Shown: positions 33 through 33,750 of the stretch, in pieces
How positions within the stretch are numbered: the stretch's first letter is position 1
How the letters are laid out: each line of letters starts with the position of its first letter
Assembly (NCBI RefSeq): GCF_001194135.2
Contig: NC_068998.1
Coordinates: 33,720,427 to 33,754,831, forward strand
Source: Octopus bimaculoides
Taxonomy: Eukaryota
Reading direction: 5' to 3'
DNA: 34,405 bases
Program-made: the position numbers and the translations under genes
Notes under the pieces: model-generated
What the model saw: the letters and a program-made list of their open reading frames with translations, nothing else
What the model was told of the DNA's origin: nothing
Databases searched by the model: none

Positions 33-240
33 GTGTGTGTTTGTTCCCCCCAGCATCGCTTGACAATCGATGGTGGTGTGTTTACATCCCCGTAACTTAG
101 TGGTTCGGCAAAATAGACCGATAGAATAAGTACGAGGCTTCCAAAGAATAAGTCCTGGGGGCGATTTGCTCGACTAAAAGGTGGTGCTCCAGCATGGCCG
201 CAATCAAATGACTGAAACAAGTAAAAGAGTAAGAGTAAAA
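30..240 (+). mobile_element. SINE family A, 3' half
   Basis: Aligns by eye to 4700-4898 (gcttgacaa..gtgtgtttacatcccc..aagaataagtcctgggg..ctccagcatggccgca..aaatgactgaaacaa). Confidence 0.9.
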
Positions 241-490: not shown

Positions 491-2024
491 AGACATATAA
501 ACCAAACTGTAGATCAAATAGCTAGAGCGTGTGTTTAAGTAGCAAAAAAAAAAAAATACAGGAAAATTGCAGCAAAGCTTGCATGATAGTGGTGTCAGAC
601 ATGGCATGCAGACCATCATATAACTTCTTTTATGTTTTTCTTTTACTTTATTTTGACATGCACATTGTGTTCTTTTTTCTTCTCTTTCGTATTATGAATT
701 CAGTGTGTGCATGCACATTGCGTGTTCATACTTCTCTTTCTGGTTCCTCCTCAAAACTGTTTATAGATCACAACCATCACATGAATGCAGATTTATGAGG
801 AGCACCTCATGCTCCAATGGTTGTGAAAAAAAATTACCATCTTCAAGTACAATAACATTTGTTTCAAACACATGTATGTATAGACCTATAATTACATGTA
901 TACACATAAACAGGATAAATAGGTCCACATAATTATACACCTATACATCAGCATATATTGACATATCCATTTATTTATATATTCATAGATGAAACAAGAC
1001 TTACAGAAGATTAGTTACTGAAGTCCTGATAGTTACATAAAGTAGTGAATATAAGTCAATATATGTTCTGGAGGAATCACTGCCTGGCTAAGGTTATAAA
1101 TACATTGATAAATCATAAATTCAGAAGCATTAAACAGAACACAGAATTTCAAACACGTATTTCAATACTACGGATAACCATATCTTATAGACTAACAGCT
1201 GTAAAGATGGCACAAGTAATAAACATGTTATAATTACATTACAAACCATTTGATTGACACCTTGATAAATAACATTACTCTGTATTATATAAATCAATAC
1301 TGAAAAGTGATTGGAGTGAATAATAGATTACAAATGGTAATTATAAACAGTTGGTATTATAAAGATAGAAAAGATAAATAGATAGTTAGTAAAATAAGTG
1401 GTGCAAGAGTAGTTAGCATATGGACAGTGAAGTTGATAATAAAATTTTACAGTTCATGAATAATTAAATGCTGTGAGATGAAGTTTTGAGAAAAACAAAC
1501 ATAACACCACTGTAAAGAATCAGTGACTGAAAGTGTGACTAAAGATTATAAACTGAAAGCCCACTACTACTAATAGACGGTTGATTTTCACAAACGTCAG
1601 TATTTAAACAATATAACACACATGCACGCACACACACTCACACACACACACATACATGTGTGCATGTGCTGTGGAGTTCTATTTATTGTGTATATGTAAC
1701 AGATGATAATGGAAGTTAAACATACAAAGCAATTACAAAAAAAAAAAATTTATTAATAAACATGGAACAGAAGTATGGAGTAAACAAACAATAGAAGCAT
1801 CATATGTTATTACAAAATGCAATTCATACCTTAATTTTGTAATATAATATTACTAGGGTTATTACTGTCTATATGGGGATTTATGCCATGATATCAGCAA
1901 AGTCTATATCCATGATGATATGGTTTGAATTATAACTAAATTCAGTTTAATACAGACCAGAGATGAAATTACCCTATACCATCACTTTCATTGTTATTTT
2001 TATCAATATTATTCACATTTATAA

Positions 2025-2220
2025 GGCAGTGAGCAGGCAGAATTGTTAGTAAATGCTTAGCAGCATTTCACCAGTCTTGAGTTCAAATTCTGCTGAGGTC
2101 AGCTTCGCCATTCATTCTTTTGAAGTAGATGGAATAAGTTCCAGTTGAGCACTGGGGTTGATGTAATTGTCTTGCCCCCCCCATCCAACTTGGTGGCCTT
2201 GTGCCAAAATTTGAAACCAA
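2025..2220 (+). mobile_element. SINE family B (tRNA-derived head), near full length
   Basis: B-box-like GAGTTCAAATTC; ends ggccttgtgccaaaatttgaaacc; reverse-complement homolog at 24581-24782. Confidence 0.85.
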
Positions 2221-2499
2221 TATTATCCATGTTCTTATTTTCAATACCCAACTGATAATTATTTCATATTATGTAACGGATAAATATCGAAGAGAAATTA
2301 TATCTGTATTGAATCTCAAATTAATTATTTTTGATAAATGATACATCATGATGATATCTCAAGTAATTCTTGTTTACATAACACACATTTTTCCAACCTA
2401 TTTGACACTTTGTAGCTGAAAATAACAGAAATTTATTGGTTGGAATCTCTGTATCTATCACACACACATATACACAATGTATGCCTATACATAGTTGTC

Positions 2500-2930
2500 A
2501 AAGACATTGCCTGGATAGGTGGTGTTAATGGTGAGCTACACACCTCTGATTTGCAAAGGACATCATACTCATTGCCAAAGCCAAAGATCAACAGCAGCCC
2601 ATGCTGACAGAGCTGAAAACCCATAGCTTAGCAGCAGGCCTTAAAATGAACTACATGAAAATAAAATACATATGACCCAAGAACGTAGTATAAAAAGAAA
2701 CAGAGGTGGGAAGTGATGAAATCAAGGTGATAAAGCAGTATGTCTACTTTGTGCATAGAGTGAATATGCACTGAGATATGGATGCTGAAATCTCAAAGAG
2801 AATAGAGGCAGGATGGAAGGCATTTGCCTCAATAAAAAAGGATCTCGAAGCAAAGCTGGACAAGGCTAATACATGTCAGACTCTTCAGTAGCACTGTCCT
2901 ATCTGCACTCTTATATGCAGGTACTAGAAA
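2500..2930 (+). mobile_element. Decayed RTE-clade LINE reverse transcriptase fragment (absent from ORF track)
   Basis: Manual translation from 2550: FAKDIILIA..GLKMNYMKIK..QYVYF..EISKRIEAGWKAF..(fs)LFSSTVLSALLYAG, i.e. the YADD, thumb and C-terminal RT motifs with stops and frameshifts. Confidence 0.85.
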
Positions 2931-3489
2931 TTTTATATTGCTAGTATATTATTCAACAAAATTTTAATATATGTATATACACATATATATATGTATACAT
3001 ATATATATAGATATATGCATACCATATATGTGTGTGTGTAAGAGAGAAATAATGAGAGAAAGTGAGAGAATATGCATGCACATGTGCATATATTCAGTTG
3101 ATCTTGAACAATGTGCTTACAATGTTAAATTTTAGTGTCAAGCTGAAATTTCACCTTCAAATGCATTAATAAATTCTGCTTGCATTGAGTACCTATTCAC
3201 ACACACACACACACACATTTGTATACGTACCTACTTAGTTACATAAATAATATAATGTAAGTGTACACACATACACACACACACATATCTACACACACAC
3301 ATGGAATTTTTTTGTAGAGCAGTATTTAGTAACACATAATAATACACACATGTACAGCAAACTTACATTCTGAATTTACCCTTAAGCCTGTCATTATGAA
3401 TGTACTCAATATCTTTCTACAACTGAAAATATTTACTTAAGTTACATTTGCAAGCAGTGCTAGAGATAATAATGGAACAGTCAATGATG

Positions 3490-3715
3490 GAGATTAATCT
3501 TAGAAACAACCACAATAATAACAATATGGAAAAACAGTAATATCAATGATAACAGTAATGGTAGTAAGAGCAGTATAGTAGTAATATTGATTATACTATT
3601 AATAATAAGGATGATATTAGTATTAAAAGAAATAATAATAATATTTATGAGAAAAAATAATGATAATAACAAAACAACTATTATTATGCTTATGATTATT
3701 ACTATTTTAATATGT
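3490..3715. repeat. Degenerate (AAT/GAT/AGT)n low-complexity tract
   Basis: Imperfect trinucleotide runs; source of the Ile/Asn-rich spurious ORFs. Confidence 0.7.
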
Positions 3716-3919
3716 TTTATATTTACCACAAGGGCTATGGAAATGTGGACATTGCATGGACAAGTTACAAAACATGTGGTGGTTTACACTGATTTGCTGA
3801 GTGTAAAAATGAAAGAAACAGTACATGCAGTATTCAAAATTTTATAATGCTTCCAAAATAGGGTTATCTTGCAGGGCTAGTTAAACTACCTTACATATCC
3901 AAGATTAACTTGCACTTAC

Positions 3920-4026
3920 TGAGAATAGCCCAATTTACTTTTACAAATTTATCAGAGAAAAATACTGTCCTCTCTTCCATCATATTTCTCTCCAAGTTTA
4001 ACCAAAAATAATTGACGAAGGCTTTG
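3920..4026 (-). CDS. Candidate internal coding exon of an unidentified gene (phase 2 to 1)
   Basis: Acceptor gagttttcttttcag|, donor TCA|gtaagt, open frame KAFVNYFWLNLERNMMEERTVFFSDKFVKVNWAIL. No family recognised and no phase-compatible neighbour found. Confidence 0.3.
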
Positions 4027-4492
4027 CTGAAAAGAAAACTCCCAGTGTTCAGTTCTTTCAATACCATCTACAACACATCCTTATTTTCCATTACTCTTTT
4101 TCCATACTCATCAAACAGAGAAAACCAACTTAATCTTCTCAACCAATTTTCATGATGGATTTATCCAATAACTAAGTTCATGCTCAAGTCATGTACATGC
4201 AGAATAGTTTGATTGCTTTATTCCCATTTCTGACACAACCAGATCATAGCACTTCTGTTATTATATTTATTTCTAAAAGCTGCAACATACCAGCCAACTG
4301 ATTCTCATTGAAAGTAAGACATTTACTTATCTATGGTCCTCTCTGTAATGCTAATATGGCATCATTACTCAGATAGTAGAGGGTTGTTGTCTTCTGACAA
4401 CACCACAGTTGGTAAATACAATGTTCATATATTAATCTTCATTTGATCCAAGACTGCCCCTCTGTCAAAGAAACAAGTTTTGAGAACATATA

Positions 4493-4655
4493 GGCACAGA
4501 AGTGGCTGCATGGTAAGAAGCTTGCTTCCCAACAACATGGTTTCAGGTTCAGTTCCACTGCATGGCACCTTGGGCAAGTGTCTTCTACTATAGCCTCAGG
4601 CCAATCAAAAGCCTTGTCAGTGGATTTGGTAGATGGAAACTGAAAGACGCCTGTC

Positions 4656-4695
<40 letters not shown>

Positions 4696-4898
4696 TTGTG
4701 TGTCAGTGTTTGTCCCCACCTTTGCTTGACAACCAATGCTGGTGTGTTTACATCCCCATGACTTAGTGGCTAAGCAAAAAGAGAGTGAAAAAGTACTAGA
4801 CTTACAAAGAATAAGTCCTGGGGTTGATTTGTTTAACTAAAAGGTGGTACTCCAGCATGGCCGCAGTCAAATGACTGAAACAAATAAAAGAACAAAAG
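4493..4898 (+). mobile_element. SINE family A, full length (tRNA-like head, CORE-like block, internal GT/AT microsatellite, 3' domain)
   Basis: Head AGTGGCTGCATGGTAAG, B-box-like GGTTCAGTTCC, CORE-like ccttgggcaagt, microsatellite about 4655-4700; both halves match other copies in the window. Confidence 0.9.
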
Positions 4899-5029
4899 GA
4901 TATGTCTGACAGGTGGTGACCACACCCACTCAGCATCTTGGAATTTCTTGCAGCATTAGTGTGTGAAATTTTATGTATCACCAGCTTTGGCATTTTGAGT
5001 TTGTTGTAAATCAGGTTTTGGCAGCAGAT

Positions 5030-5400
5030 AGCATTTTAGCCAGTAGAATGTATCCCTTCTATAAAAAGGGTGGTGAAAGGAATGTATCCCTTCTATAAAA
5101 AGGGTGGTGAAACAAGCTGCATGAACTAGGAATCCTGTGGATTAATATTATTGAGGATAAATTCCCAAGATTTTTATCACAAATGTAAGATAAATATATT
5201 TCATATCTATACAAGTCAGAGCCCTATGAGCATAAAGGATTCATTGGCCAAGTAGATCTGCTCCTCATTCTATCAACTTTGGTGTCTCAGAGTTCATTTT
5301 TGTCTCATATTCTCCTCCTCCTAAATACATCAATGAGGTACTTCCACCGCGTATATCAACTCCCACTTTTGCACATATGATACTACTCTTTAAATTATAA
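5030..5400 (+). mobile_element. Highly decayed CR1/L2/Jockey-group LINE RT remnant with internal deletion
   Basis: Frameshifted motifs YPFYKKGG (PIYKKGD-like), KLHELGI, GV(P)QSSFLSHILLLL-YINE (GVPQGSILGP..YIND-like) and FAH-DTTL (FADDTTL-like). Confidence 0.6.
5046..5112. repeat. Perfect 33-bp direct repeat, period 34
   Basis: gaatgtatcccttctataaaaagggtggtgaaa at 5046-5078 and 5080-5112. Confidence 0.95.
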
Positions 5401-5562
5401 TGATGCAGATTATAAAATAATTGTTCAAAATACCAGGGATGCTTTTGTAAAACTTAGTTTAGTACAGGGAAGAATATTTGGCTAAAATCGGAACACAATT
5501 ACTTAGTAAGCATGAGATCCATGTTTCAATCCTAGTTGATTAAAAAATATAAATGTATTGTA

Positions 5563-5875: not shown

Positions 5876-7311
5876 TTGGAAATTCAGACTGATAACCATT
5901 TCATTATTTATATTGACCTCATATTAAACTGTTAGCCATTAAGTTATATATACACACTCAGGACGGTTTCTCCTTTCTTCTTTGCATTTTTTGGAGAGTT
6001 GTAATTACCATCTGCTTCTTAATAATAAAAATGCCTCCATTAACTGCTACTACTGTCCTCCAAACTGTTCTGTCTTTAACAATACTTCTCTGGGTTTGTG
6101 ATCAATATGGCACTTTTGCAAGTTGCTTTTATTGTTGCCTTTGAAATGCAGCTTGGTTCTTCATCTTTGTACTTCCTTAAAAAAAAAAGTCTCACTGAAA
6201 GCAATCGTTTTGGAATCCCTTTTGTGTGCCAGAAATTTTAACATTCTAGTCATCATTATTGATACTGGCACAGGATAGACATTAATTTTGGAAGTTTAGC
6301 TAGCTGCAACACTTTGATGCTGGTGATTTTTATCATGCCATCAAGTGTTTAAGAACTTACAAAGGCACTGAAAATGGAATGAATTCAGCCTTTTCAATTT
6401 CACAATTCTTGAGTAAATAGTCCATGACATTGATTCATGAAACTGAGGATAAACACTTCATAGATTTTGATTTTAGTTCTTCCATGCTATATATTTGTGT
6501 GCATGTATGTGTGTGTGTTTGTGTGTGTGTTGTATGCGGGTGTATATGCATGTGTTGTGTGAGTGTGATTGTGTGTTTGTGTAAACATTTGTTTTAATTT
6601 GATTTTATCAACACAAAATTCATTTCTTTGATACCCTTGAAATTAATTGCTCGTTGTGAGGTGTCATAAAATTCCAATGAAACTCTTTCTCTCTCTCTCC
6701 TGTTTCCCTCTCTTTTTCTAGCTTGCACTCTCTCTTTTGTCTTTTTCCCAGCTCTAAAGGCTAAAAGATATCATCTCAATAAAGTTAATGCTCTATAAAT
6801 ATAATGTTTCACCCCCATGTAGAAAATGGCTTTTAAATCCTATCTAATAACAGTATGTGCTCATTATTTGAGTTGATTTTCTCTTTCATTCACAATTACC
6901 TGCTAATCCTCAAATGCCACTTAATACCTCATTTGCTGCTTCAAATATTCCCACTCAAAGAATCACAAAACACTATTATCTCTTAAAATACTGTTTCCAA
7001 AGGACTTTTCATAGTTTCCCTTCAATTAATATTAGCAGTATCAGCATTCAAGTTCAGATAATTTTTTGATTAAATTTCTAATTTGATATCAACTGATTAA
7101 ATTATATTTAGTAAATCATCATCGAAACTACACAGCAATCAGACAAATGATATTTCATAGTGAAGATTTTAATGAATCACATTTATTTACTCCGACCAGC
7201 AATTGTAAATTATATTAATTATAAATGTAGTTATCATAGCTGAAGCAAAAGTGACAAATGACATGTTGCACATTATTTATTAACCAACTCTGTATGTTGT
7301 GGGCATTAATT

Positions 7312-10378: not shown

Positions 10379-10529
10379 TCAGGGTGATAAATTCCATCTT
10401 CTTTTCATTCACATTTAGTCCTATGTTAGCAGCAGCATTTTCCAGGAGATGTAGTAAATGTTCAGCATATTTTGTGTTGTCTGCAAAGAGCACTATGCCA
10501 TCAGTATAATTGGTGTTAGTCAAGTAGGT
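10379..10529 (-). mobile_element. Short RTE-type RT fragment, separate copy of the family at 10701-12103
   Basis: Aligns to about 11330-11480; translates NYTDGIVLFADNTKYAEHLLHLLENAAANIGLNVNEKK; lies outside the TSD of the neighbouring insertion. Confidence 0.85.
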
Positions 10530-10700
10530 TATATTAAACTACGGTTTTACCTTTAAATTACCTACTACTGTATAACTTATAACAAGGACCATACATACTG
10601 AGGTAATACCAGGAGTGCTTTTGGATGCATCTATCCCTTAGACGGTTACATTACCTCTAACTTATATCTTAAATAGTAATTTATACATAAACATAAACAA

Positions 10701-11717
10701 TCATCATCATCTAGTCAGGCTGATTGCCTGGGCCAGTTTGACTACCTCCCTCCATCCCTCCTGTTCTTCCATTAGTGTTTTTAGGTCTTCAACTTGGCAT
10801 CCAACATCTTCTGCAAGCTGTTGTGTAATACGTCTTCCATGGCCTTCCAGCTGCTGTGGTACCAGGATTTGGTGTCCACAGCAACACATTACTCACAAGT
10901 TCTTCTTTACTTCTCCAGCAGAGGCCAGCAAACCTCAACCTCTGCTCTTGGATGGTTGATGAGAAAGTTGGTACATTCTCATATAACTGCTGTTTTGTTG
11001 GGTGCTCTCTCCAAGAGATGTTGAGAACTGCATGTAACATTCTGGTGTAGGCACCATCCAGCATGCACCTGAGTTTCTTGGTTGAGAGTCCAAGTCAGAG
11101 ATCCCTATACAAGCACAGATTCAACAACTGCTCTGAAGAACTGTCTCTTCAATTTATCTGGTAGCATTGACTTCCATATTGTTCTAAGACCATCTATAGC
11201 TGCCCAAGCTTTAGCAACGTGAGATTTAATATCTTTTTCAGTGGACATGATATTGCTGCCTAGATAAGTAAACTTGTTGACATTTTTCAAGGGCTTTTGT
11301 TTGATGGTCTTGATTTCACTTGTTGTGTTCAGGGTGATAAACTCTGTCTTCTTTTCATTTACATAGAGCCCAATGTTAGCAGCTGCATTTTCCAGGAGAT
11401 GGAGTAAATGTTCAGCATTTTTTTGTGTTGCATGTGAAGAGCGCTATGTCATCAGCATAATTGGCGTCAGTCTAGTAGGTGACCAGATATCTTCTGCCTC
11501 TAGACTTCTGTAAAGTGAAACCCAGAACATTGTGTTGAACTACTGAGGTATGCAATACATAATTGAGGCACAAGATGAACAAGCAAGGAGCTAGTGTGTC
11601 ACTCTGCAGTACTCCTGCACAAACGTCAAGGAGATCAGTATCTCCATCTGGTGACTGCACTTTCGCTTGGGTGTTTTTATACAGCATCATTACTGACTTT
11701 ATTGTTTCATCAGGGAT
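10701..11717 (-). mobile_element. RTE-type LINE, sense 3' segment with (GAT)n tail
   Basis: IPDETIKSVMMLY..GVLQSDTLAPCLF..NYADDIAL..FTYLGS..RLRFAG..GRPWKT; tail gatgatgatga ends at 10701; several stops and frameshifts. Confidence 0.95.
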
Positions 11718-12105
11718 GACATTCTTCTTAAATCGTGCAACTCAGTATATCATCAAAGCGAGATAAAAGTCTGGACAGAAGGATGTATTCTACCTTTCCC
11801 CCGAAAAGGGGATCTGGGCCTTGCAATAAACTACAGAGCAATTACATTAACACCAATTGCAGTGAAGATTTACAATGCATTGCTACTCAATCGAATCCAA
11901 CTTCAAATTGAAAGAATTCTTAGGAAAAATCAAAATGGATTCAGGAGGAGCTGCTTTACATCTGGTCAAATTCTCACAGTTAGGAGGGCGTTGGAAGGAG
12001 TACAAGCCAAAAACCTTAATGCAGTTCTGCTCTTTGTTGATTTCTCCAAGGCCTTTGACTCTGTACACAGGGATAAGGTGGCAGAAATCCTTTGGGCATA
12101 TGGAA
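11715..12105 (+). mobile_element. RTE-type LINE, inverted 5' segment of the same insertion
   Basis: Open 130-codon frame 11715-12104: ILPFPRKGDLG..NYRAITL..QNGFR..FVDFSKAFDSVHR..AYG. TSD AAACATAAACAA at 10689-10700 and 12104-12115. Confidence 0.95.
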
Positions 12106-12495
12106 ACATAAACAAAGTTTGTCCAAAAAGAAACAAAATTTTTAAAATAGCACAGCAACCATCTGGTATGGTGTGTTCATGATTGCCATGTTACATATGT
12201 GTGACCTTGATCTTTTCGTTAAATAATAATCACATCAGACAGTTATCACTTTATACCTGTCAGATAAAGTACATATTTAGTGCTCTTGACAGATTTTCAT
12301 GAGTTGAACTATGAAGAATTAGGATATGTAATGTATGGGTATGAAGATTTTTTTCAAATTGAGTAAAACGTTTACAGAAATTTTTTAATATAACAACAAG
12401 CCTATGGGAAGATTCTTTGAGCTGTAAACAGATGTCATGAGAGCAATCCCACCATTTAAAATTAGGAAGAATATCCACTGAAGATAATTCCATAC

Positions 12496-12646
12496 CTTTA
12501 AAAAGACCAACGCAAGTAACTAGAAACATCTTCAATTTTCTTTTCAAAATTTTAGCACAAACTTTTTCAATCTGACTGTTTCTAAAATTCCCAAAAAACG
12601 CATCTTTGGAAACTTCAAAACAATCAGAGAAAGTATATACTATGAT
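12496..12646 (-). CDS. Candidate 151-nt coding exon (phase 0 to 1) overlapping the left hairpin arm
   Basis: Acceptor ctctttctattttatag|, donor AAG|gtatgg; IIVYTFSDCFEVSKDAFFGNFRNSQIEKVCAKILKRKLKMFLVTCVGLFK; the frame stays open to 12260. Family not recognised. Confidence 0.35.
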
Positions 12647-12798
12647 CTATAAAATAGAAAGAGTTTATAGATCACAGTATATGCTTTTGATGATTGTTTC
12701 TAAAGTTTCTAAAGAAGTATTCTTGGGAAATTTTAGAAACATTCAGACTGAAAAAGTTTGTTCTAAAATTTTGAAAGGAAAATTGAAGTTGTTTCTAG
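12520..12798. repeat. Long inverted repeat, arms about 134 bp, 10-nt loop
   Basis: 12520-12653 versus the reverse complement of 12664-12798, roughly 85% identical by eye; loop atagaaagag. Confidence 0.95.
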
Positions 12799-15169: not shown

Positions 15170-15243
15170 TATAATTGACAAATATCCTTGAAGATGGTAC
15201 TCCAGCATGACTGCAATCCACTGATAGAAGCCAGTAAAAGAAG
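15170..15243 (+). mobile_element. SINE-A-like 3' end
   Basis: ggtactccagcatgactgca..ccagtaaaaga matches 4846-4890. Confidence 0.6.
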
Positions 15244-19229: not shown

Positions 19230-20468
19230 CAGGGTGCCAGGGGTATTTGAGGACAGTTTTGGTATACAATAAAACAACTATATTTCAGCATAAATAAATA
19301 TGTATTTGAATAAACAATCATGTAATTAGTCTTGATAATGATCTTTTTAAGCAAATTATTCTATGAAACCACCTTCGGCTTTGATGACTGCTTCAATGTG
19401 GGACCGAAACCGCTGGCATGCTGACACTATATGGTCCTTATTCATTTCGGACATCACTTGGACCTTCAGTGAAGCTATGGTATTATGAGGATGACAATTA
19501 ATCTCCCTTTCAACAGTCCTACACATAGAGTAGTCCATGGGGTTCAAATCTGGCGAGTTTGGAGGCCACACATTGGGTGTTACATAATTATAAAGATTGT
19601 CTGACAACCATTCTTGGGTGACTAGCACTTTGTAAGAAGGTGCTGGCTCTTGTTGAAACACGAATGGCCTTCCACTGCATGTTTCATCAATCCAAGGCTT
19701 GATAACAGTTTTCAGTACCTCAATGTATCCAGCAGCATTAATTCTAAGACCCTGTGGAAAAAAGTGGGGAGGCACCACATGACCTTTGCTACTTACCGTT
19801 CCTAAAACTATCACAGTTGCTGGAAATTTTGTGTGCATCACTCTGGGTACTTCAGAAGGATCTGCACATAACCACCTGTCATTTCTTCTGTTAGACTTTT
19901 GATCCTGGTTAAATTTTTCCATCAGAGAAAGGTCAAAGCATACCTTTCACTTTGTTAAGTAATCGTTTTGAACAAATGAGACGATTTACCTGTGTCTTTG
20001 CAGACACGAATTGGCCTTCCCACATTACATAGGAATTGTATCGAATGTCATGATGTACCACAGTTCTGATAGTCCACTCTGACACCCTAAGTTCTTTAGC
20101 AATGGACCTCATTGATATTCTGAGGTTTTCATTGATAATGTTTTGAACACGTATAAATTCCAATATCCTTTTAGTGTCTGTGTGTTGTGAGTGTTTTTTC
20201 CTCTTTGATACAGGTGAAACATTACTATCACATGCCTCCAATTCCAACAGAACTTTGTGTACAAATGATCTTGCAAGAATTAGAAAGTTGCTAATTTCTA
20301 AATCACTGTGGTTTGCATGTATAGCAACTATGATTGCATGTCTTTTCATTTCTTGAGTTAGCAGATCTTGAAAGGATTATCTAAAAGAAAACAAAAAAAG
20401 ATACATTAAATAATTTGAAGATGTAATGAACTAAAAATGAAATGTCCTCAAATACCCCTTGCACCCTG
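19230..20468 (-). mobile_element. Full-length maT (DD37D) Tc1/mariner transposon with pseudogenised transposase
   Basis: 26-bp TIRs CAGGGTGC(C/A)AGGGGTATTTGAGGACA with one mismatch; TA at 19228-29 and 20469-70. Transposase 20349 to 19356 has a W-to-stop at 19933 and a frameshift near 19920. FSD / QQE(for D) / WPPNSPDLNPMDY, with 37 residues counted between the 2nd and 3rd acidic positions. Confidence 0.95.
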
Positions 20469-24807: not shown

Positions 24808-25070
24808 TTTACATTATTTACATTGTTTACATTTGGCGGATATTTGTCCTTATCTTGTTTGTTGTTAATACAATGTTTCAGCTGATATACCCTCCAGCCT
24901 TCATCAGGTATCTTGGGGAAATTTCGAACCTGGGTTCTCATTCTTAAGGTATTCAATGTTATTATTATTATTATTATTATTATTAATATTATTATTCAGG
25001 TCACTGCCTGGAATCGAATTCAGAATCATCGGGTTAGCAGCCTGCGCTCTTAACCACCATGCCGTATGCC
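24808..25070 (-). mobile_element. SINE family C, full copy: tRNA-like head, (AAT)n, hammerhead-like 3' domain
   Basis: Head GGCATACGGCATGGTGGTTAAG..CTGCTAA..GAATTCGATTCC (A box, Ser-GCT-like loop, B box); hammerhead at 24912-24867. Confidence 0.85.
24867..24912 (-). ncRNA. Minimal hammerhead-like motif in SINE-C, degenerate
   Basis: GATAC-CTGATGA-A-GGCTG(gagggtatat)CAGCT-GAAAC-ATT-GTATT. Confidence 0.65.
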
Positions 25071-25074
25071 TACT

Positions 25075-25116
25075 TTCGATTCCAGGCAGTGACCTGAATA
25101 ATAATAATAATAATAA

Positions 25117-25147
<31 letters not shown>

Positions 25148-25330
25148 AAGATGAAGAAGAAGAGGAACATTGAAAAATACTTTAGGAAGGAGAACCCAGG
25201 TTCAAAATTTCCCCAAGACACCTGATGAAGACTGGAGGGTGTATCAGCCAAAACATTGTGTTAACAACAAACAAGATGAGGACAAATATTTGTCAAATGT
25301 AAATAATGTACATAATTACTCATCTCATAA
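25075..25330 (+). mobile_element. SINE family C, 5'-truncated copy inverted relative to 24808-25070
   Basis: Starts inside the B box (ttcgattccaggcagtgacctgaat); internal (AAT)n(AAG)n; rest matches the reverse complement of 24808-25019. Confidence 0.85.
25217..25262 (+). ncRNA. Minimal hammerhead-like motif in SINE-C, degenerate
   Basis: GACAC-CTGATGA-A-GACTG(gagggtgtat)CAGCC-AAAAC-ATT-GTGTT; G12 mutated to A. Confidence 0.55.
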
Positions 25331-32992: not shown

Positions 32993-33225
32993 CAAGGTGC
33001 ATCCAAAGAGTATCTAACTTCATTTTCTCCTGTCAAAACTAATGTTGCAGAGACAAAATCTTTAGGCTGGGAGGTGAAGCCATCCTCCCTGTGCATGCAT
33101 GAACATTTTCATGCTGGTAGGTTGCATCAGTCCTTGGCTGTTACGCCTAGTGTACAGATGTGTACTGCATGCTTGTCAGATTTTCATTTTCAGGCAAGGT
33201 GATCCTATACATCGAGCAGAGAGCA
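32993..33225 (+). mobile_element. Mariner 5' end (TIR-like sequence, UTR, first codons to IEQR)
   Basis: TA|CAAGGTGCATCCAAAGAGTATC resembles CGAGG-type mariner TIRs; ends atcgagcagaga; 33125-33225 homologous to the reverse complement of 33650-33750. Confidence 0.6.
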
Positions 33226-33750
33226 AAAACCCATGTTTCATCACCAGTGATGATGATCATGAAGTCTGGGTCATCGTTTACACAGTTCTGAGTGATTTCC
33301 ATGCAGAGTTGCTCCTGCTGCTCTACCAGGACTTTGGGACCGAATTTTGCTGACACTCTCCTCATGCACAAACCTTCCATTAAAATAGAATGCATTGACT
33401 CTGTGCGTATTCCCACTTCGTTAGCAATTTCTTGGGTTGTTACATGATAGTCTTCATGACCATTTGTCAAACCTTTTGAATTGGCTCCCCGTTTTGGCTT
33501 GTGGAATGCCTGTCTGAGCATGCCTTATTCTCTATTGTGGTTCAGCTATGTTTGAAGGGGTTGTACCACTCCTCGATCTGAGTTTTGTTCCTGACACCAT
33601 CACTGAAAGCTTGAATCTTTTGGATGATTTACGCTTTTGGTAAAAACTAGATGCAATATCTCTGCTTGATGCATTCTGTGAAAACGAATATCCAATGAGC
33701 ATGCACTACATGTCTGTATGTTAGGCATAACAGCCAGAGACTCACAATAA
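33226..33750 (-). mobile_element. Mariner transposase N-terminal half, decayed
   Basis: IKQRYCI*F..TTQEIANEVGI..ILMEGLCMRRVSAKFGPK..DDPDFMIIITGDETWV. Confidence 0.85.

What the first reader, a model, noticed from the sequence alone, without database searches (positions are those of the whole stretch)
10689..12115. Complete twin-priming 5'-inversion in a non-L1 (RTE-type) LINE
Seen: (i) 12-bp TSD AAACATAAACAA at both ends; (ii) 3' part on the minus strand with a (GAT)n tail, 5' part inverted on the plus strand; (iii) the parts are contiguous in the protein (..WAYG | IPDETIK..) with essentially no loss; (iv) the inner junction shares GAT/ATC at 11715-11717; (v) the TSD edge AA at 12104-05 matches element sequence GGA-A, as expected for internal priming. 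Established: this geometry defines twin priming, best known from mammalian L1. Inference: RTE-type machinery twin-primes in this mollusc.
Basis: partly seen in the sequence, partly recalled or inferred. Interest (0 to 1): 0.75.

Follow-up and report, generated by a model that had tools for sequence, protein, structure and literature searches.

The report
Twin-primed 5'-inverted RTE-like LINE insertion
A 1.4-kb dead copy of an RTE-like jumping gene was inserted with its front part flipped, the signature of 'twin priming' known mainly from mammalian L1, and related elements elsewhere show the same flip, so the mechanism is probably not L1-specific.

Summary
An exact 12-bp duplication (AAACATAAACAA) brackets 10701-12103. 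The minus-strand part (11717->10701) is the 3' part of a LINE reverse-transcriptase ORF. It ends in (TGA)3, and the stop codon lies inside that repeat. The plus-strand part (11718->12103) is the RT segment lying immediately upstream in intact relatives. The two parts abut to the nucleotide.

Microhomologies are AA at the outer junction and AT at the inner junction.

It is not a misassembly. Short-read unitigs from independent runs span the inner and right junctions in three related species. The left junction is spanned in two of them and depth-covered in the third. The insertion is therefore old and orthologous. No inverted repeat lies at the breakpoints.

Intact relatives have one ~1009-aa APE+RT ORF, no ORF1, and triplet-repeat tails. 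These are RTE hallmarks, but no phylogeny was run.

Two of eight copies of a related family in another organism show the same geometry. Two more head-to-head junctions of this family appear in the short-read unitigs.

Verdict: a real twin-priming-type 5' inversion by non-L1, RTE-like machinery. This is a known mechanism in a new clade and host, of moderate interest. No empty site was found, and the host was not checked.

The parts
10689..10700 (.). Left copy of the 12-bp target-site duplication AAACATAAACAA. In the element's sense orientation this is the 3'-side copy. Its 3' end on the + strand is the inferred first-strand primer.
   Evidence: exact, and only two exact copies in the window; an exact 300-nt unitig in run X1 spans 10630-10770. 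An organism C unitig spans it with a 6-nt deletion at 10685.
10701..10712 (-). Terminal microsatellite. The sense strand reads AGA TGA TGA TGA, and the ORF's stop codon is the first TGA unit, so there is essentially no 3' UTR.
   Evidence: Relatives L003, L004 and L006 end in ..TGA(TGA)n. L001 ends with TAG inside (GATA)n, and L005 with TAA inside (GGTAA)n.
10701..11717 (-). Direct (3') segment of the LINE, 1017 nt. It covers RT from IPDETIK through YADD, the thumb and the C-terminal ...WREVV. It is degenerate, with at least 3 frameshifts and at least 2 in-frame stops.
   Evidence: (RVT_1, E 7.5e-27). It aligns to L001 6292-7297 at 71%.
11716..11717 (.). Inversion junction. AT fits both the start of the direct segment (rc = AT of ATC CCT) and the family sequence upstream of the inverted segment (..TTC AAT GAC..). 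This is a 2-nt microhomology.
   Evidence: loose ends ...GACAATTTCA lie before 11716, and six unitig alignments start at 11716. Exact unitigs cover 11688-11764 in X1 and X5. Unitigs with 2 differences span it in organisms B and C.
11718..12103 (+). Inverted (5') segment, 386 nt. It covers RT from DILLKSCN through FVDFSKAFD to WAYG and is an open frame throughout.
   Evidence: It aligns to L001 5905-6291 at 74%.
12104..12105 (.). Outer (5') junction microhomology. AA is both the first two TSD letters and the element's GGA-A. This is the inferred annealing site of the second (top-strand) primer on the RNA.
   Evidence: (joint 11716<->12105, 1 nt fits both sides).
12104..12115 (.). Right copy of the 12-bp target-site duplication AAACATAAACAA.
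   Evidence: Exact unitigs in organism A cover 12040-12500. An organism B contig covers 11831-12500, and an organism C unitig covers 12076-12387.

Best explanation
This is one retrotransposition event of an RTE-like LINE (APE endonuclease plus RT, with a (TGA)n tail) that was resolved by twin priming.

Inferred order of events:
1. The element's endonuclease nicked the window's + strand after ...AAACATAAACAA.
2. That 3'-OH primed reverse transcription on the (UGA)n end of the RNA. cDNA 1 is now 10701->11717.
3. The other strand was cut 12 nt away.
4. The freed 3' overhang (...ATGTTT-3' in sense orientation) annealed by its last two T's to the AA of ...UAUGGAAUCCC... inside the same RNA. It primed cDNA 2, which ran upstream for 386 nt. 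This is now the complement of 11718-12103.
5. cDNA 1 stopped exactly where primer 2 sat, so no element letter is lost.
6. After RNA removal, the two cDNA 3' ends paired through the self-complementary AT and were filled in. This gave the head-to-head junction at 11717/11718.

Shown directly: the TSD, the canonical tail, nucleotide-exact adjacency of the two segments in element coordinates, the two 2-nt microhomologies, and the authenticity and age of the locus. Inferred: the order of events and which enzyme performed them.

The copy has since decayed, and it is fixed in at least three related species.
For: - TSD: an exact 12-mer at both edges. Chance is about 1e-6 to 1e-5. The length lies in the 10-12 bp mode reported for RTE-clade LINEs (PMC6007223).
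- Adjacency: protein alignment to intact homologues, unitigs of collinear copies joining 12105 to 11716, and L001 coordinates 6291|6292.
- Tail: the stop codon embedded in a terminal microsatellite is the rule in six relatives, and it is (TGA)n in three of them.
- Authenticity: exact unitigs in organism A cover the inner junction (X1 and X5), the left junction (X1) and the right junction.
- Orthology: organisms B and C have unitigs over the inner junction and contigs or unitigs over the right junction. Organism C has a unitig over the left junction, and organism B has depth across it.
- No inverted repeat at the breakpoints: the best match is 7 nt, and 229 of 500 shuffles do as well.
- Recurrence in a related family. 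It has about 58% amino-acid identity, the same tail type, and comes from ENA assembly ERZ21867824. Among eight copies mapped on a full-length TSD-flanked reference (L003), three are collinear, three are 5'-truncated and two are 5'-inverted with X close to Z.
  - L004: 11-bp TSD, 6-8 nt duplicated, microhomology CG and CAT.
  - L008: 14-nt gap.
- Recurrence in this family. Two further head-to-head junctions of twin-priming polarity appear in the runs' unitigs: 11032|~11934 in organisms A, B and C, and 11353|~11557-11580 in organism B.
- Fit to a published model: 5' inversion is proposed to need a 3' overhang of roughly 10-20 nt (PMC4245944). The TSD here is 12 nt.
Against: - No empty site was found. 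Organisms A, B and C all carry the filled site, and organism D's low-coverage run is uninformative. A single-step origin is therefore inferred from geometry, not observed.
- Each microhomology is only 2 nt and weak on its own.
- The same final structure would result from an in-place inversion of the 5' segment after a plain 5'-truncated insertion.
- The abundant subfamily in the same genome has a different 3' end. The window copy's subfamily is known here only from this locus.
- Run X5 (organism A, 2015) has no unitig over 10680-10704.
- The extra examples in L004 and L008 rest on one unverified public long-read assembly.
Confidence: 0.85

Rival explanations
1. Post-insertion inversion. An ordinary 5'-truncated copy (element positions of 11718..12103 followed by 11717..10701, all on one strand) was inserted with its TSD. 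Later its first 386 bp were flipped in place, either by two double-strand breaks and end joining or by recombination.
For: The end product is formally identical to the twin-priming product. The locus is old, being shared by three species, so there was time for rearrangement.
Against: - One break would have to fall exactly at the TSD/element boundary and leave the 12-bp TSD intact.
- No inverted repeat at the two breakpoints exceeds chance.
- No letters were lost or added at either junction.
- The same geometry recurs in L004 and L008 of a related family. Independent precise in-place inversions are an unlikely explanation for that.
Confidence: 0.07
2. Two independent insertions. A 5'-truncated copy on the minus strand and an unrelated internal fragment of the same family on the plus strand happened to land side by side.
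For: The neighbourhood is rich in transposable elements. Another fragment of the same family lies only 170 bp away at 10379-10529.
Against: - The plus-strand fragment has no tail of its own.
- Its end is adjacent, to the nucleotide, to the start of the minus-strand copy in element coordinates. This would be expected about once in thousands of cases.
- A single 12-bp TSD brackets both parts.
- No spacer lies at the inner junction.
Confidence: 0.02
3. Assembly artefact. The assembler joined reads from different copies of a repeat in the wrong orientation.
For: The family is multi-copy, with unitig depth up to about 100 times single-copy. Short-read unitigs break inside it.
Against: - The inner junction is carried by exact unitigs in two organism A runs of different years (X1 and X5).
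- The left junction is carried by an exact unitig in X1.
- The right junction is carried by exact unitigs in all four organism A runs tested.
- Organisms B and C have unitigs or contigs over the inner and right junctions. Organism C has one over the left junction.
Confidence: 0.01
4. Trans-mobilisation. The RNA of this element was inserted and twin-primed by the enzymes of another LINE in the genome, so the event says nothing about RTE-type machinery.
For: No feature of a single dead copy identifies the enzyme. L1 is known to twin-prime other RNAs occasionally, giving 5'-inverted Alu, SVA and mRNA copies (PMC2912911).
Against: - The insertion starts at the lineage's own (TGA)n end rather than at a poly(A).
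- The 12-bp TSD is in the RTE mode.
- 5'-inverted copies recur among copies of a related family that carry intact ORFs (L004 has a 1008-aa ORF). This fits cis action.
Confidence: 0.05

Closest known systems
Twin priming of mammalian LINE-1 (Ostertag and Kazazian 2001; statistics in Kojima 2010, PMC2912911)
   Same: - A TSD surrounds the whole insert.
- The 3' segment carries the tail.
- The 5' segment is inverted, with its outer end next to the start of the 3' segment, give or take a few nucleotides.
- Microhomology of 2-5 nt is typical at the 5' junction and is also found at the inversion junction.
- TSDs of 10-17 bp are typical for inverted L1.
- About 31% of human- and chimpanzee-specific L1 insertions flanked by 5-30 bp TSDs are 5'-inverted, against 2 of 8 in the related family sampled here.
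   Different: - The element here is not L1. It has no ORF1 and no C-terminal cysteine-rich domain, its ORF is about 1009 aa, and human ORF2p matches it only at E 1e-22.
- The tail is (TGA)n containing the stop codon rather than poly(A).
- The host is not a mammal.
Single 5'-inverted insert of zebrafish Nimb-2_DR in chicken DT40 cells (Yamaguchi et al. 2014, PMC4245944)
   Same: It is a non-L1 LINE with TSDs of about 12 bp that gave a 5' inversion. This supports the idea that overhang length, not L1 identity, permits second priming.
   Different: - It belongs to a different clade (Nimb) and came from a cell-culture assay.
- It is a single case, and the authors treated it as an exception.
- The cases here are genomic, and in the related family they are recurrent.
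RTE-clade LINEs (C. elegans RTE-1, BovB, plant AdLINE3; hallmarks as summarised in PMC5850137)
   Same: - A single ORF of about 1000 aa with APE and RT.
- No poly(A).
- Labile triplet repeats at the 3' terminus.
- TSDs around 10-19 bp.
- About 3.2 kb of ORF-bearing body (L003 and L004 align over 3194 nt).
   Different: - The full-length relative is 4014 nt, because its 5' UTR is about 970 nt long and holds a partly repeated unit of about 447 nt.
- Clade membership by RT phylogeny was not tested.
- I found no report of twin priming for RTE in the searchable literature.
5'-inverted Alu, SVA and mRNA retrocopies made by L1 in trans (PMC2912911)
   Same: They show the same inverted geometry on non-L1 RNAs.
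   Different: They are rare (1 Alu, and 4 of 477 SVA). They are made by L1 enzymes on poly(A) RNAs. Here the tail and the TSD fit the element's own machinery.

Membership tests
Twin-priming-type 5'-inverted LINE insertion | One target-site duplication flanks the whole composite (inverted plus direct segment). | tested here: met
   An exact 12-mer at 10689-10700 and 12104-12115, with no other exact copy in the window. Chance is about 4e-7 to 9e-6.
Twin-priming-type 5'-inverted LINE insertion | The direct segment ends in the element's canonical 3' tail, directly at one TSD copy. | tested here: met
   The copy ends AGA TGA TGA TGA followed by the TSD. The same (TGA)n end containing the stop codon is seen in relatives L003, L004 and L006. 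Caveat: the abundant subfamily in this genome ends differently.
Twin-priming-type 5'-inverted LINE insertion | The outer end of the inverted segment (X) and the start of the direct segment (Z) are adjacent in element coordinates, give or take a small deletion or duplication. | tested here: met
   X+1 = Z. This is shown by the homologue alignment ..AYG|IP.., by collinear copies joining 12105 to 11716, and by L001 6291|6292.
Twin-priming-type 5'-inverted LINE insertion | Microhomology at the 5' junction and at the inversion junction. | tested here: met
   AA at 12104-12105 and AT at 11716-11717. Each is only 2 nt, so each is weak on its own.
Twin-priming-type 5'-inverted LINE insertion | No pre-existing inverted repeats at the two breakpoints, which would point to recombination. 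| tested here: met
   The longest inverted match within 40 nt of the breakpoints is 7 nt. 229 of 500 shuffles reach that length.
Twin-priming-type 5'-inverted LINE insertion | Single-event origin: an empty site with one copy of the TSD exists, and no intermediate form exists. | tested here: inconclusive
   The site is filled, with the inversion, in organisms A, B and C. Organism D's run has about 4-5x coverage and shows neither form.
[quoted passage not shown] | A single ORF of about 1000 aa with an N-terminal APE endonuclease and RT, no ORF1, and no C-terminal zinc-knuckle or RNase H domain. | tested here: met
   Intact relatives P0149 and P0162 are 1009 and 1008 aa. They hit Exo_endo_phos, Exo_endo_phos_2 and RVT_1 only. 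No other gene is called upstream. The window copy itself holds only the RT and C-terminal part.
[quoted passage not shown] | The 3' terminus consists of short, labile tandem repeats, without poly(A) and with a minimal 3' UTR. | tested here: met
   In all six relatives and in the window copy the stop codon lies inside or directly before the terminal repeat: (TGA)n, (GATA)n, (GGTAA)n or AT-rich. The hallmark is as described in PMC5850137.
[quoted passage not shown] | TSD mostly 10-12 bp. | tested here: met
   12 bp in the window, 9 bp in L003 and 11 bp in L004. Reference range from PMC6007223.
[quoted passage not shown] | The RT domain groups with RTE reference elements in a phylogeny. | not tested
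   No reference set of LINE clades (Repbase or RTclass1) is on hand.
L1 clade | ORF1 plus an ORF2 of about 1275 aa with a C-terminal cysteine-rich domain, and a poly(A) tail. | tested here: not met
   Human ORF2p is the best solved-structure match, but only at E 1e-22 over APE and RT. The ORF ends about 130 aa after the RT motifs. The tail is (TGA)n.

The most novel reading that the evidence does not exclude
Twin priming may be a general and frequent outcome for RTE-type LINEs, on the order of a quarter of insertions as for human L1. More broadly, it may apply to any APE-type LINE whose staggered cuts leave an overhang of about 9-12 nt or more. In that case 5' inversion would be set by overhang length rather than by L1-specific or mammal-specific factors.
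Probability: 0.45. Interest if true: 0.55.

Novelty: new member of a known kind. Interest (0 to 1): 0.42.

Why it matters
Five-prime inversion has been treated as a peculiarity of L1 in mammalian cells. In the one comparative assay I could read (PMC4245944), it was seen only for human L1 in human cells, apart from a single Nimb-2_DR insert. The authors concluded that it depends on LINE species and host, and suggested that a long 3' overhang is required.

The clean, old, orthologous example found here lies in an RTE-like element with a 12-bp TSD. Two more complete examples occur among eight copies of a related family. Together they extend the mechanism to a clade that lacks ORF1 and poly(A), and they fit the overhang-length idea.

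Practically, it means that annotation of RTE-rich genomes should expect head-to-head 'two-fragment' copies that are really single insertions. This affects copy counts, age estimates and insertion-site calls.

Tried and rejected
1. **Doubt about the tail.** All of the roughly 65-70 other copies in the same genome diverge from the window copy at 10704-10708. They continue CCTCGAT + (A)n. I first suspected a 3'-truncated, internally primed insertion. I rejected this after relatives L003, L004 and L006 showed the same (TGA)n end containing the stop codon.

2. **Empty site.** Organism D (X19) laid on 10560-12260 gave only five joints, none of them 10700->12116, and no junction-spanning piece. This is inconclusive.

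3. **Second locus (joint 11032|~11934).** I looked for its outer end near 11033. No flank-type loose end was shown, although 7 loose-end rows were not displayed. The geometry remains incomplete.

4. **Joint 11715<->11789 'opposite strands'.** It looked like another inversion. In element coordinates it is a collinear internal deletion of about 315 nt in another copy. I rejected it as an inversion.

5. **Joint 11141<->11321 in X19.** Its polarity could not be determined.

6. **Names for homologues.** None of the 120 best hits or the five clusters carries an informative name.

7. **Octopus RTE-2_OV (PMC9115989).** It has UTRs of about 600 nt and a zinc finger. It is not shown to be this family, and the host's identity stays unverified.

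8. **Ichiyanagi and Okada 2008** on RTE mobility pathways is not held in the library.

9. **L003's apparent 16-nt 'TSD' and L004's first apparent 5' end.** The first is a satellite repeat. The true TSD of L003 is ATACAGAAA. The second turned out to be the inversion junction.
Full report
**What is in the sequence**

The 12-mer AAACATAAACAA stands at 10689-10700 and at 12104-12115. There is no other exact copy in the 34-kb window. Given the window's composition (A 0.32, T 0.34), the chance that this 12-mer recurs at a fixed place is about 4e-7. Allowing 25 combinations of boundary offsets raises it to about 9e-6.

Between the two copies lie two pieces of one LINE on opposite strands.

- On the minus strand, 11717->10701 reads IPDETIKSVMMLYKNT...NYADDIALF...YLGS...WREVVKLAQAISLTR. 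It ends ACT AGA TGA TGA TGA directly against the left repeat. It has at least three frameshifts and two in-frame stops.
- On the plus strand, 11718->12103 is an open frame: DILLKSCNSVYHQSEIKVWTEGCILPFPRKGDLG...FVDFSKAFDSVHRDKVAEILWAYG.

Joined in that order, the protein hits Pfam RVT_1 at E 7.5e-27 and nothing else.

**The two pieces are neighbours in the intact element**

A search of the large protein collection gave 2287 homologues, the best with 54-68% identity. In an alignment of ten of them, the sequence runs ...IPPEVWKT..F(N/D)DILLKSCN...WTEGCILPFPKKGDL...ILLAYGIPxETV... without interruption. WAYG|IPDE is therefore a contiguous stretch.

At the nucleotide level:

- Unitigs of other copies of the family in related organisms join 12105 to 11716 on opposite window strands, with one letter fitting either side.
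- Loose ends after 11717 in organism A read TCCATATGC.., the complement of ..GCATATGGA.
- The two parts align to the closest relative fetched (L001, a TARA metagenome scaffold, 72% nucleotide identity) at 5905-6291 and 6292-7297. These are exactly adjacent.

TATGG ends at 12103. The next two element letters (A of GGA, A of ATC) are identical to the first two TSD letters, 12104-12105. The A of ATC is also present as the complement of 11717. So nothing is lost, and at most one letter is duplicated.

At the inner junction, other copies read ..GAC AAT TTC A|AT GAC ATT.., and their alignments to the plus part all start at 11716.

**Is the tail a real 3' end?**

This needed work. Unitigs and raw reads of the same species show about 65-70 other copies that match the last 60 nt of the ORF at 85% or more. 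All of them leave the window copy at 10704-10708 and continue ...GGATGATG-CCTCGAT-(A)7-17 before variable sequence. The unitig across 10689-10765 is single-copy. This raised the possibility of an internally primed, 3'-truncated insert.

Six relatives fetched with their DNA settled the point.

| Relative | 3' end |
|---|---|
| L003, L004 | ATA TGA (TGA)4 |
| L006 | AGA TGA (TGA)3 |
| L001 | GGA TAG ATAGA |
| L005 | TAA inside (GGTAA)n |
| L002 | TGA, then AT-rich repeats |

A stop codon embedded in, or directly before, a short terminal repeat is thus the rule in this lineage, and (TGA)n is its commonest form. The window copy has a complete canonical end. The abundant subfamily carries a derived one.

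**Is the locus real?**

Yes.

- Inner junction: exact 77-nt unitigs (11688-11764) at about single-copy depth in two organism A runs of different years. Unitigs with two differences span it in organism B (11684-11789) and organism C (11688-11789).
- Right junction: exact unitigs from 12040 or 12063 to 12500 in four organism A runs. An organism B contig reaches from 12500 to 11831, and an organism C unitig covers 12076-12387.
- Left junction: an exact 300-nt unitig in X1. A 195-nt organism C unitig has a 6-nt deletion in the left TSD region and one substitution. Organism B has depth across it. One older organism A run has no unitig there.

The insertion, with its inversion, predates the split of three species, which fits its decayed ORF. 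No empty site was found. Organism D's run is too shallow to show either form.

**What kind of element is it?**

Intact relatives (P0149 and P0162, 1009 and 1008 aa) contain only Exo_endo_phos, Exo_endo_phos_2 and RVT_1. No other gene is called upstream. L003 and L004 are 97% identical over 3194 nt.

The full-length copy L003 is 4014 nt and is flanked by a 9-bp TSD (ATACAGAAA) inside a satellite. Its 5' UTR is about 970 nt and contains a partly repeated unit of about 447 nt.

A single APE+RT ORF of about 1000 aa, labile triplet repeats instead of poly(A), and TSDs of about 10-19 bp are the hallmarks given for RTE in PMC5850137. PMC6007223 gives 10-12 bp as the RTE mode. Human L1 ORF2p is the best solved-structure match, but only at E 1e-22, and the ORF lacks L1's C-terminal domain.

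I therefore call the element RTE-like. The host ('mollusc') was not verified, because organisms are coded.

**Mechanism**

The anatomy is exactly that predicted by twin priming as described for L1 (PMC2912911). Written in the element's sense orientation it is: TSD – complement of [X..Y] – [Z..tail] – TSD, with X+1 = Z.

The inferred course is:

1. A nick on the window's + strand after AAACAA.
2. First cDNA synthesis from the (UGA)n end up to Z.
3. A second cut 12 nt away.
4. The freed ...GTTT-3' end pairs its last two T's with the AA of ..GGAAUC.. and primes a second cDNA, which runs 386 nt upstream.
5. The two cDNA 3' ends pair through the self-complementary AT and are filled in.

The geometry, TSD, tail and microhomologies are shown. 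The order of events and the enzyme are inferred.

The main rival is an in-place inversion after an ordinary truncated insertion. It would need a break exactly at the TSD boundary with no loss, and there is no inverted repeat at the breakpoints (best 7 nt, matched by 229 of 500 shuffles). Two independent insertions and misassembly are excluded for practical purposes. Trans-mobilisation by another LINE cannot be excluded from a dead copy, but it fits the tail and TSD poorly.

**Recurrence**

While checking relatives, I mapped eight copies of the (TGA)n-tailed family of ENA assembly ERZ21867824 onto L003.

- L003, L011 and L012 are collinear. This fixes the canonical orientation of the 5' region.
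- L007, L009 and L010 are 5'-truncated.
- L004 and L008 are 5'-inverted with the same geometry.

L004 has an 11-bp TSD (ATATATACACG at 666-676 and 4539-4549). Its inverted segment runs from element position 832 to 34, and its direct segment from 825 to 4014. Six to eight letters are therefore duplicated. CG is shared at the outer junction and CAT at the inner one, and the 1008-aa ORF is intact.

L008 lies in an (AT)n microsatellite. Its inverted segment runs from about position 492 to 1, plus 11 nt of a further upstream repeat unit. Its direct segment starts at about position 507, leaving a 14-nt gap.

Two of eight is a small and biased sample from an unverified assembly. It still resembles the ~31% of 5'-inverted copies among human and chimpanzee L1 insertions.

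In the window's own family, unitigs show two further head-to-head junctions of twin-priming polarity:

- 11032 joined to about 11934, at single-copy depth in organisms A, B and C.
- 11353 joined to sense RT sequence near 11557-11580, in organism B.

The outer ends of both could not be located.

**Comparison with what is known, and novelty**

Twin priming itself is long known. In the searchable literature I found no report of it for RTE or for invertebrate LINEs. One key paper is not held in the library.

The comparative assay of Yamaguchi et al. (PMC4245944) saw 5' inversions only for human L1 in human cells, plus one Nimb-2_DR insert. It proposed that a long overhang is needed. The 9-12 bp TSDs here fit that idea.

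I rate this as a new member of a known kind. It is a sound and somewhat useful extension of a known mechanism to another clade and host, not a new mechanism.

Noticed in passing
window 10379-10529 (minus strand): A second, short internal fragment of the same LINE family. It is 85-88% identical to 11329-11480 and covers the YADD..EKKTEF region. It lies 170 bp outside the TSD, has neither a tail nor a 5' part, and is not part of the twin-primed insert.
   Followed up: partly
window 10530-10671: A very high-copy repeat of about 140 bp. Its unitig depth is up to about 90 times single-copy in all four organisms, with sharp edges at 10530 and 10671. It may be a SINE or a SINE fragment and was not identified.
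   Followed up: no
window 10701-10765 versus other copies (runs X1, X21, X16, X20): The abundant subfamily of this LINE in the same genome has a different 3' end: ...ACT GGA TGA TG-CCTCGAT-(A)7-17. The 3' terminus has evidently been remodelled within the lineage, from a triplet repeat to a short unique sequence plus an A-run.
   Followed up: partly
window 11032 joined to ~11934; window 11353 joined to ~11557-11580 (unitigs of other loci): Two further head-to-head inversion junctions of this family, at other loci. The first is at single-copy depth in organisms A, B and C. The second is in organism B. Their polarity is as in twin priming, but their outer ends were not found.
   Followed up: partly
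L004 666-4549 and L008 ~1590-5541 (ENA assembly ERZ21867824): Two complete 5'-inverted copies of a related (TGA)n-tailed RTE-like family. L004 still carries an intact 1008-aa ORF. They were found among eight copies sampled.
   Followed up: yes
L003 1528-2500: The full-length relative has a 5' UTR of about 970 nt. Element positions 1-93 recur at about 440-538 (87% identity), so the UTR contains a partly repeated unit of about 447 nt. L008's inverted segment implies a source RNA with a further unit. This recalls the monomeric 5' UTRs of mouse L1.
   Followed up: partly
window 19356-20349 (minus strand) and 33147-33521 (minus strand): ORFs resembling Tc1/mariner-type transposase remnants by eye (for example ..NSPDLNPMDY..). 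Pfam gave only a weak helix-turn-helix hit, so they were not confirmed.
   Followed up: partly
window 12520-12798 and 24813-25316: Two inverted-repeat structures. The first has 101-nt arms that are 86% complementary and 77 nt apart. The second has 185-nt arms that are 80% complementary and 134 nt apart. They may be MITE-like elements. The first lies 400 bp from the insert.
   Followed up: no
window 124-235, 4787-4898 and 15191-15242: Another dispersed repeat family with 79-92% identity between copies. The window also holds very many (AC)n, (AT)n and (ACAT)n microsatellites.
   Followed up: no
window 10680-10704 in run X5: The 2015 run of organism A has no unitig over the left TSD/tail junction, although it has the inner junction. 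This could be a coverage gap (97% of the run was read) or a polymorphism in the left flank.
   Followed up: no
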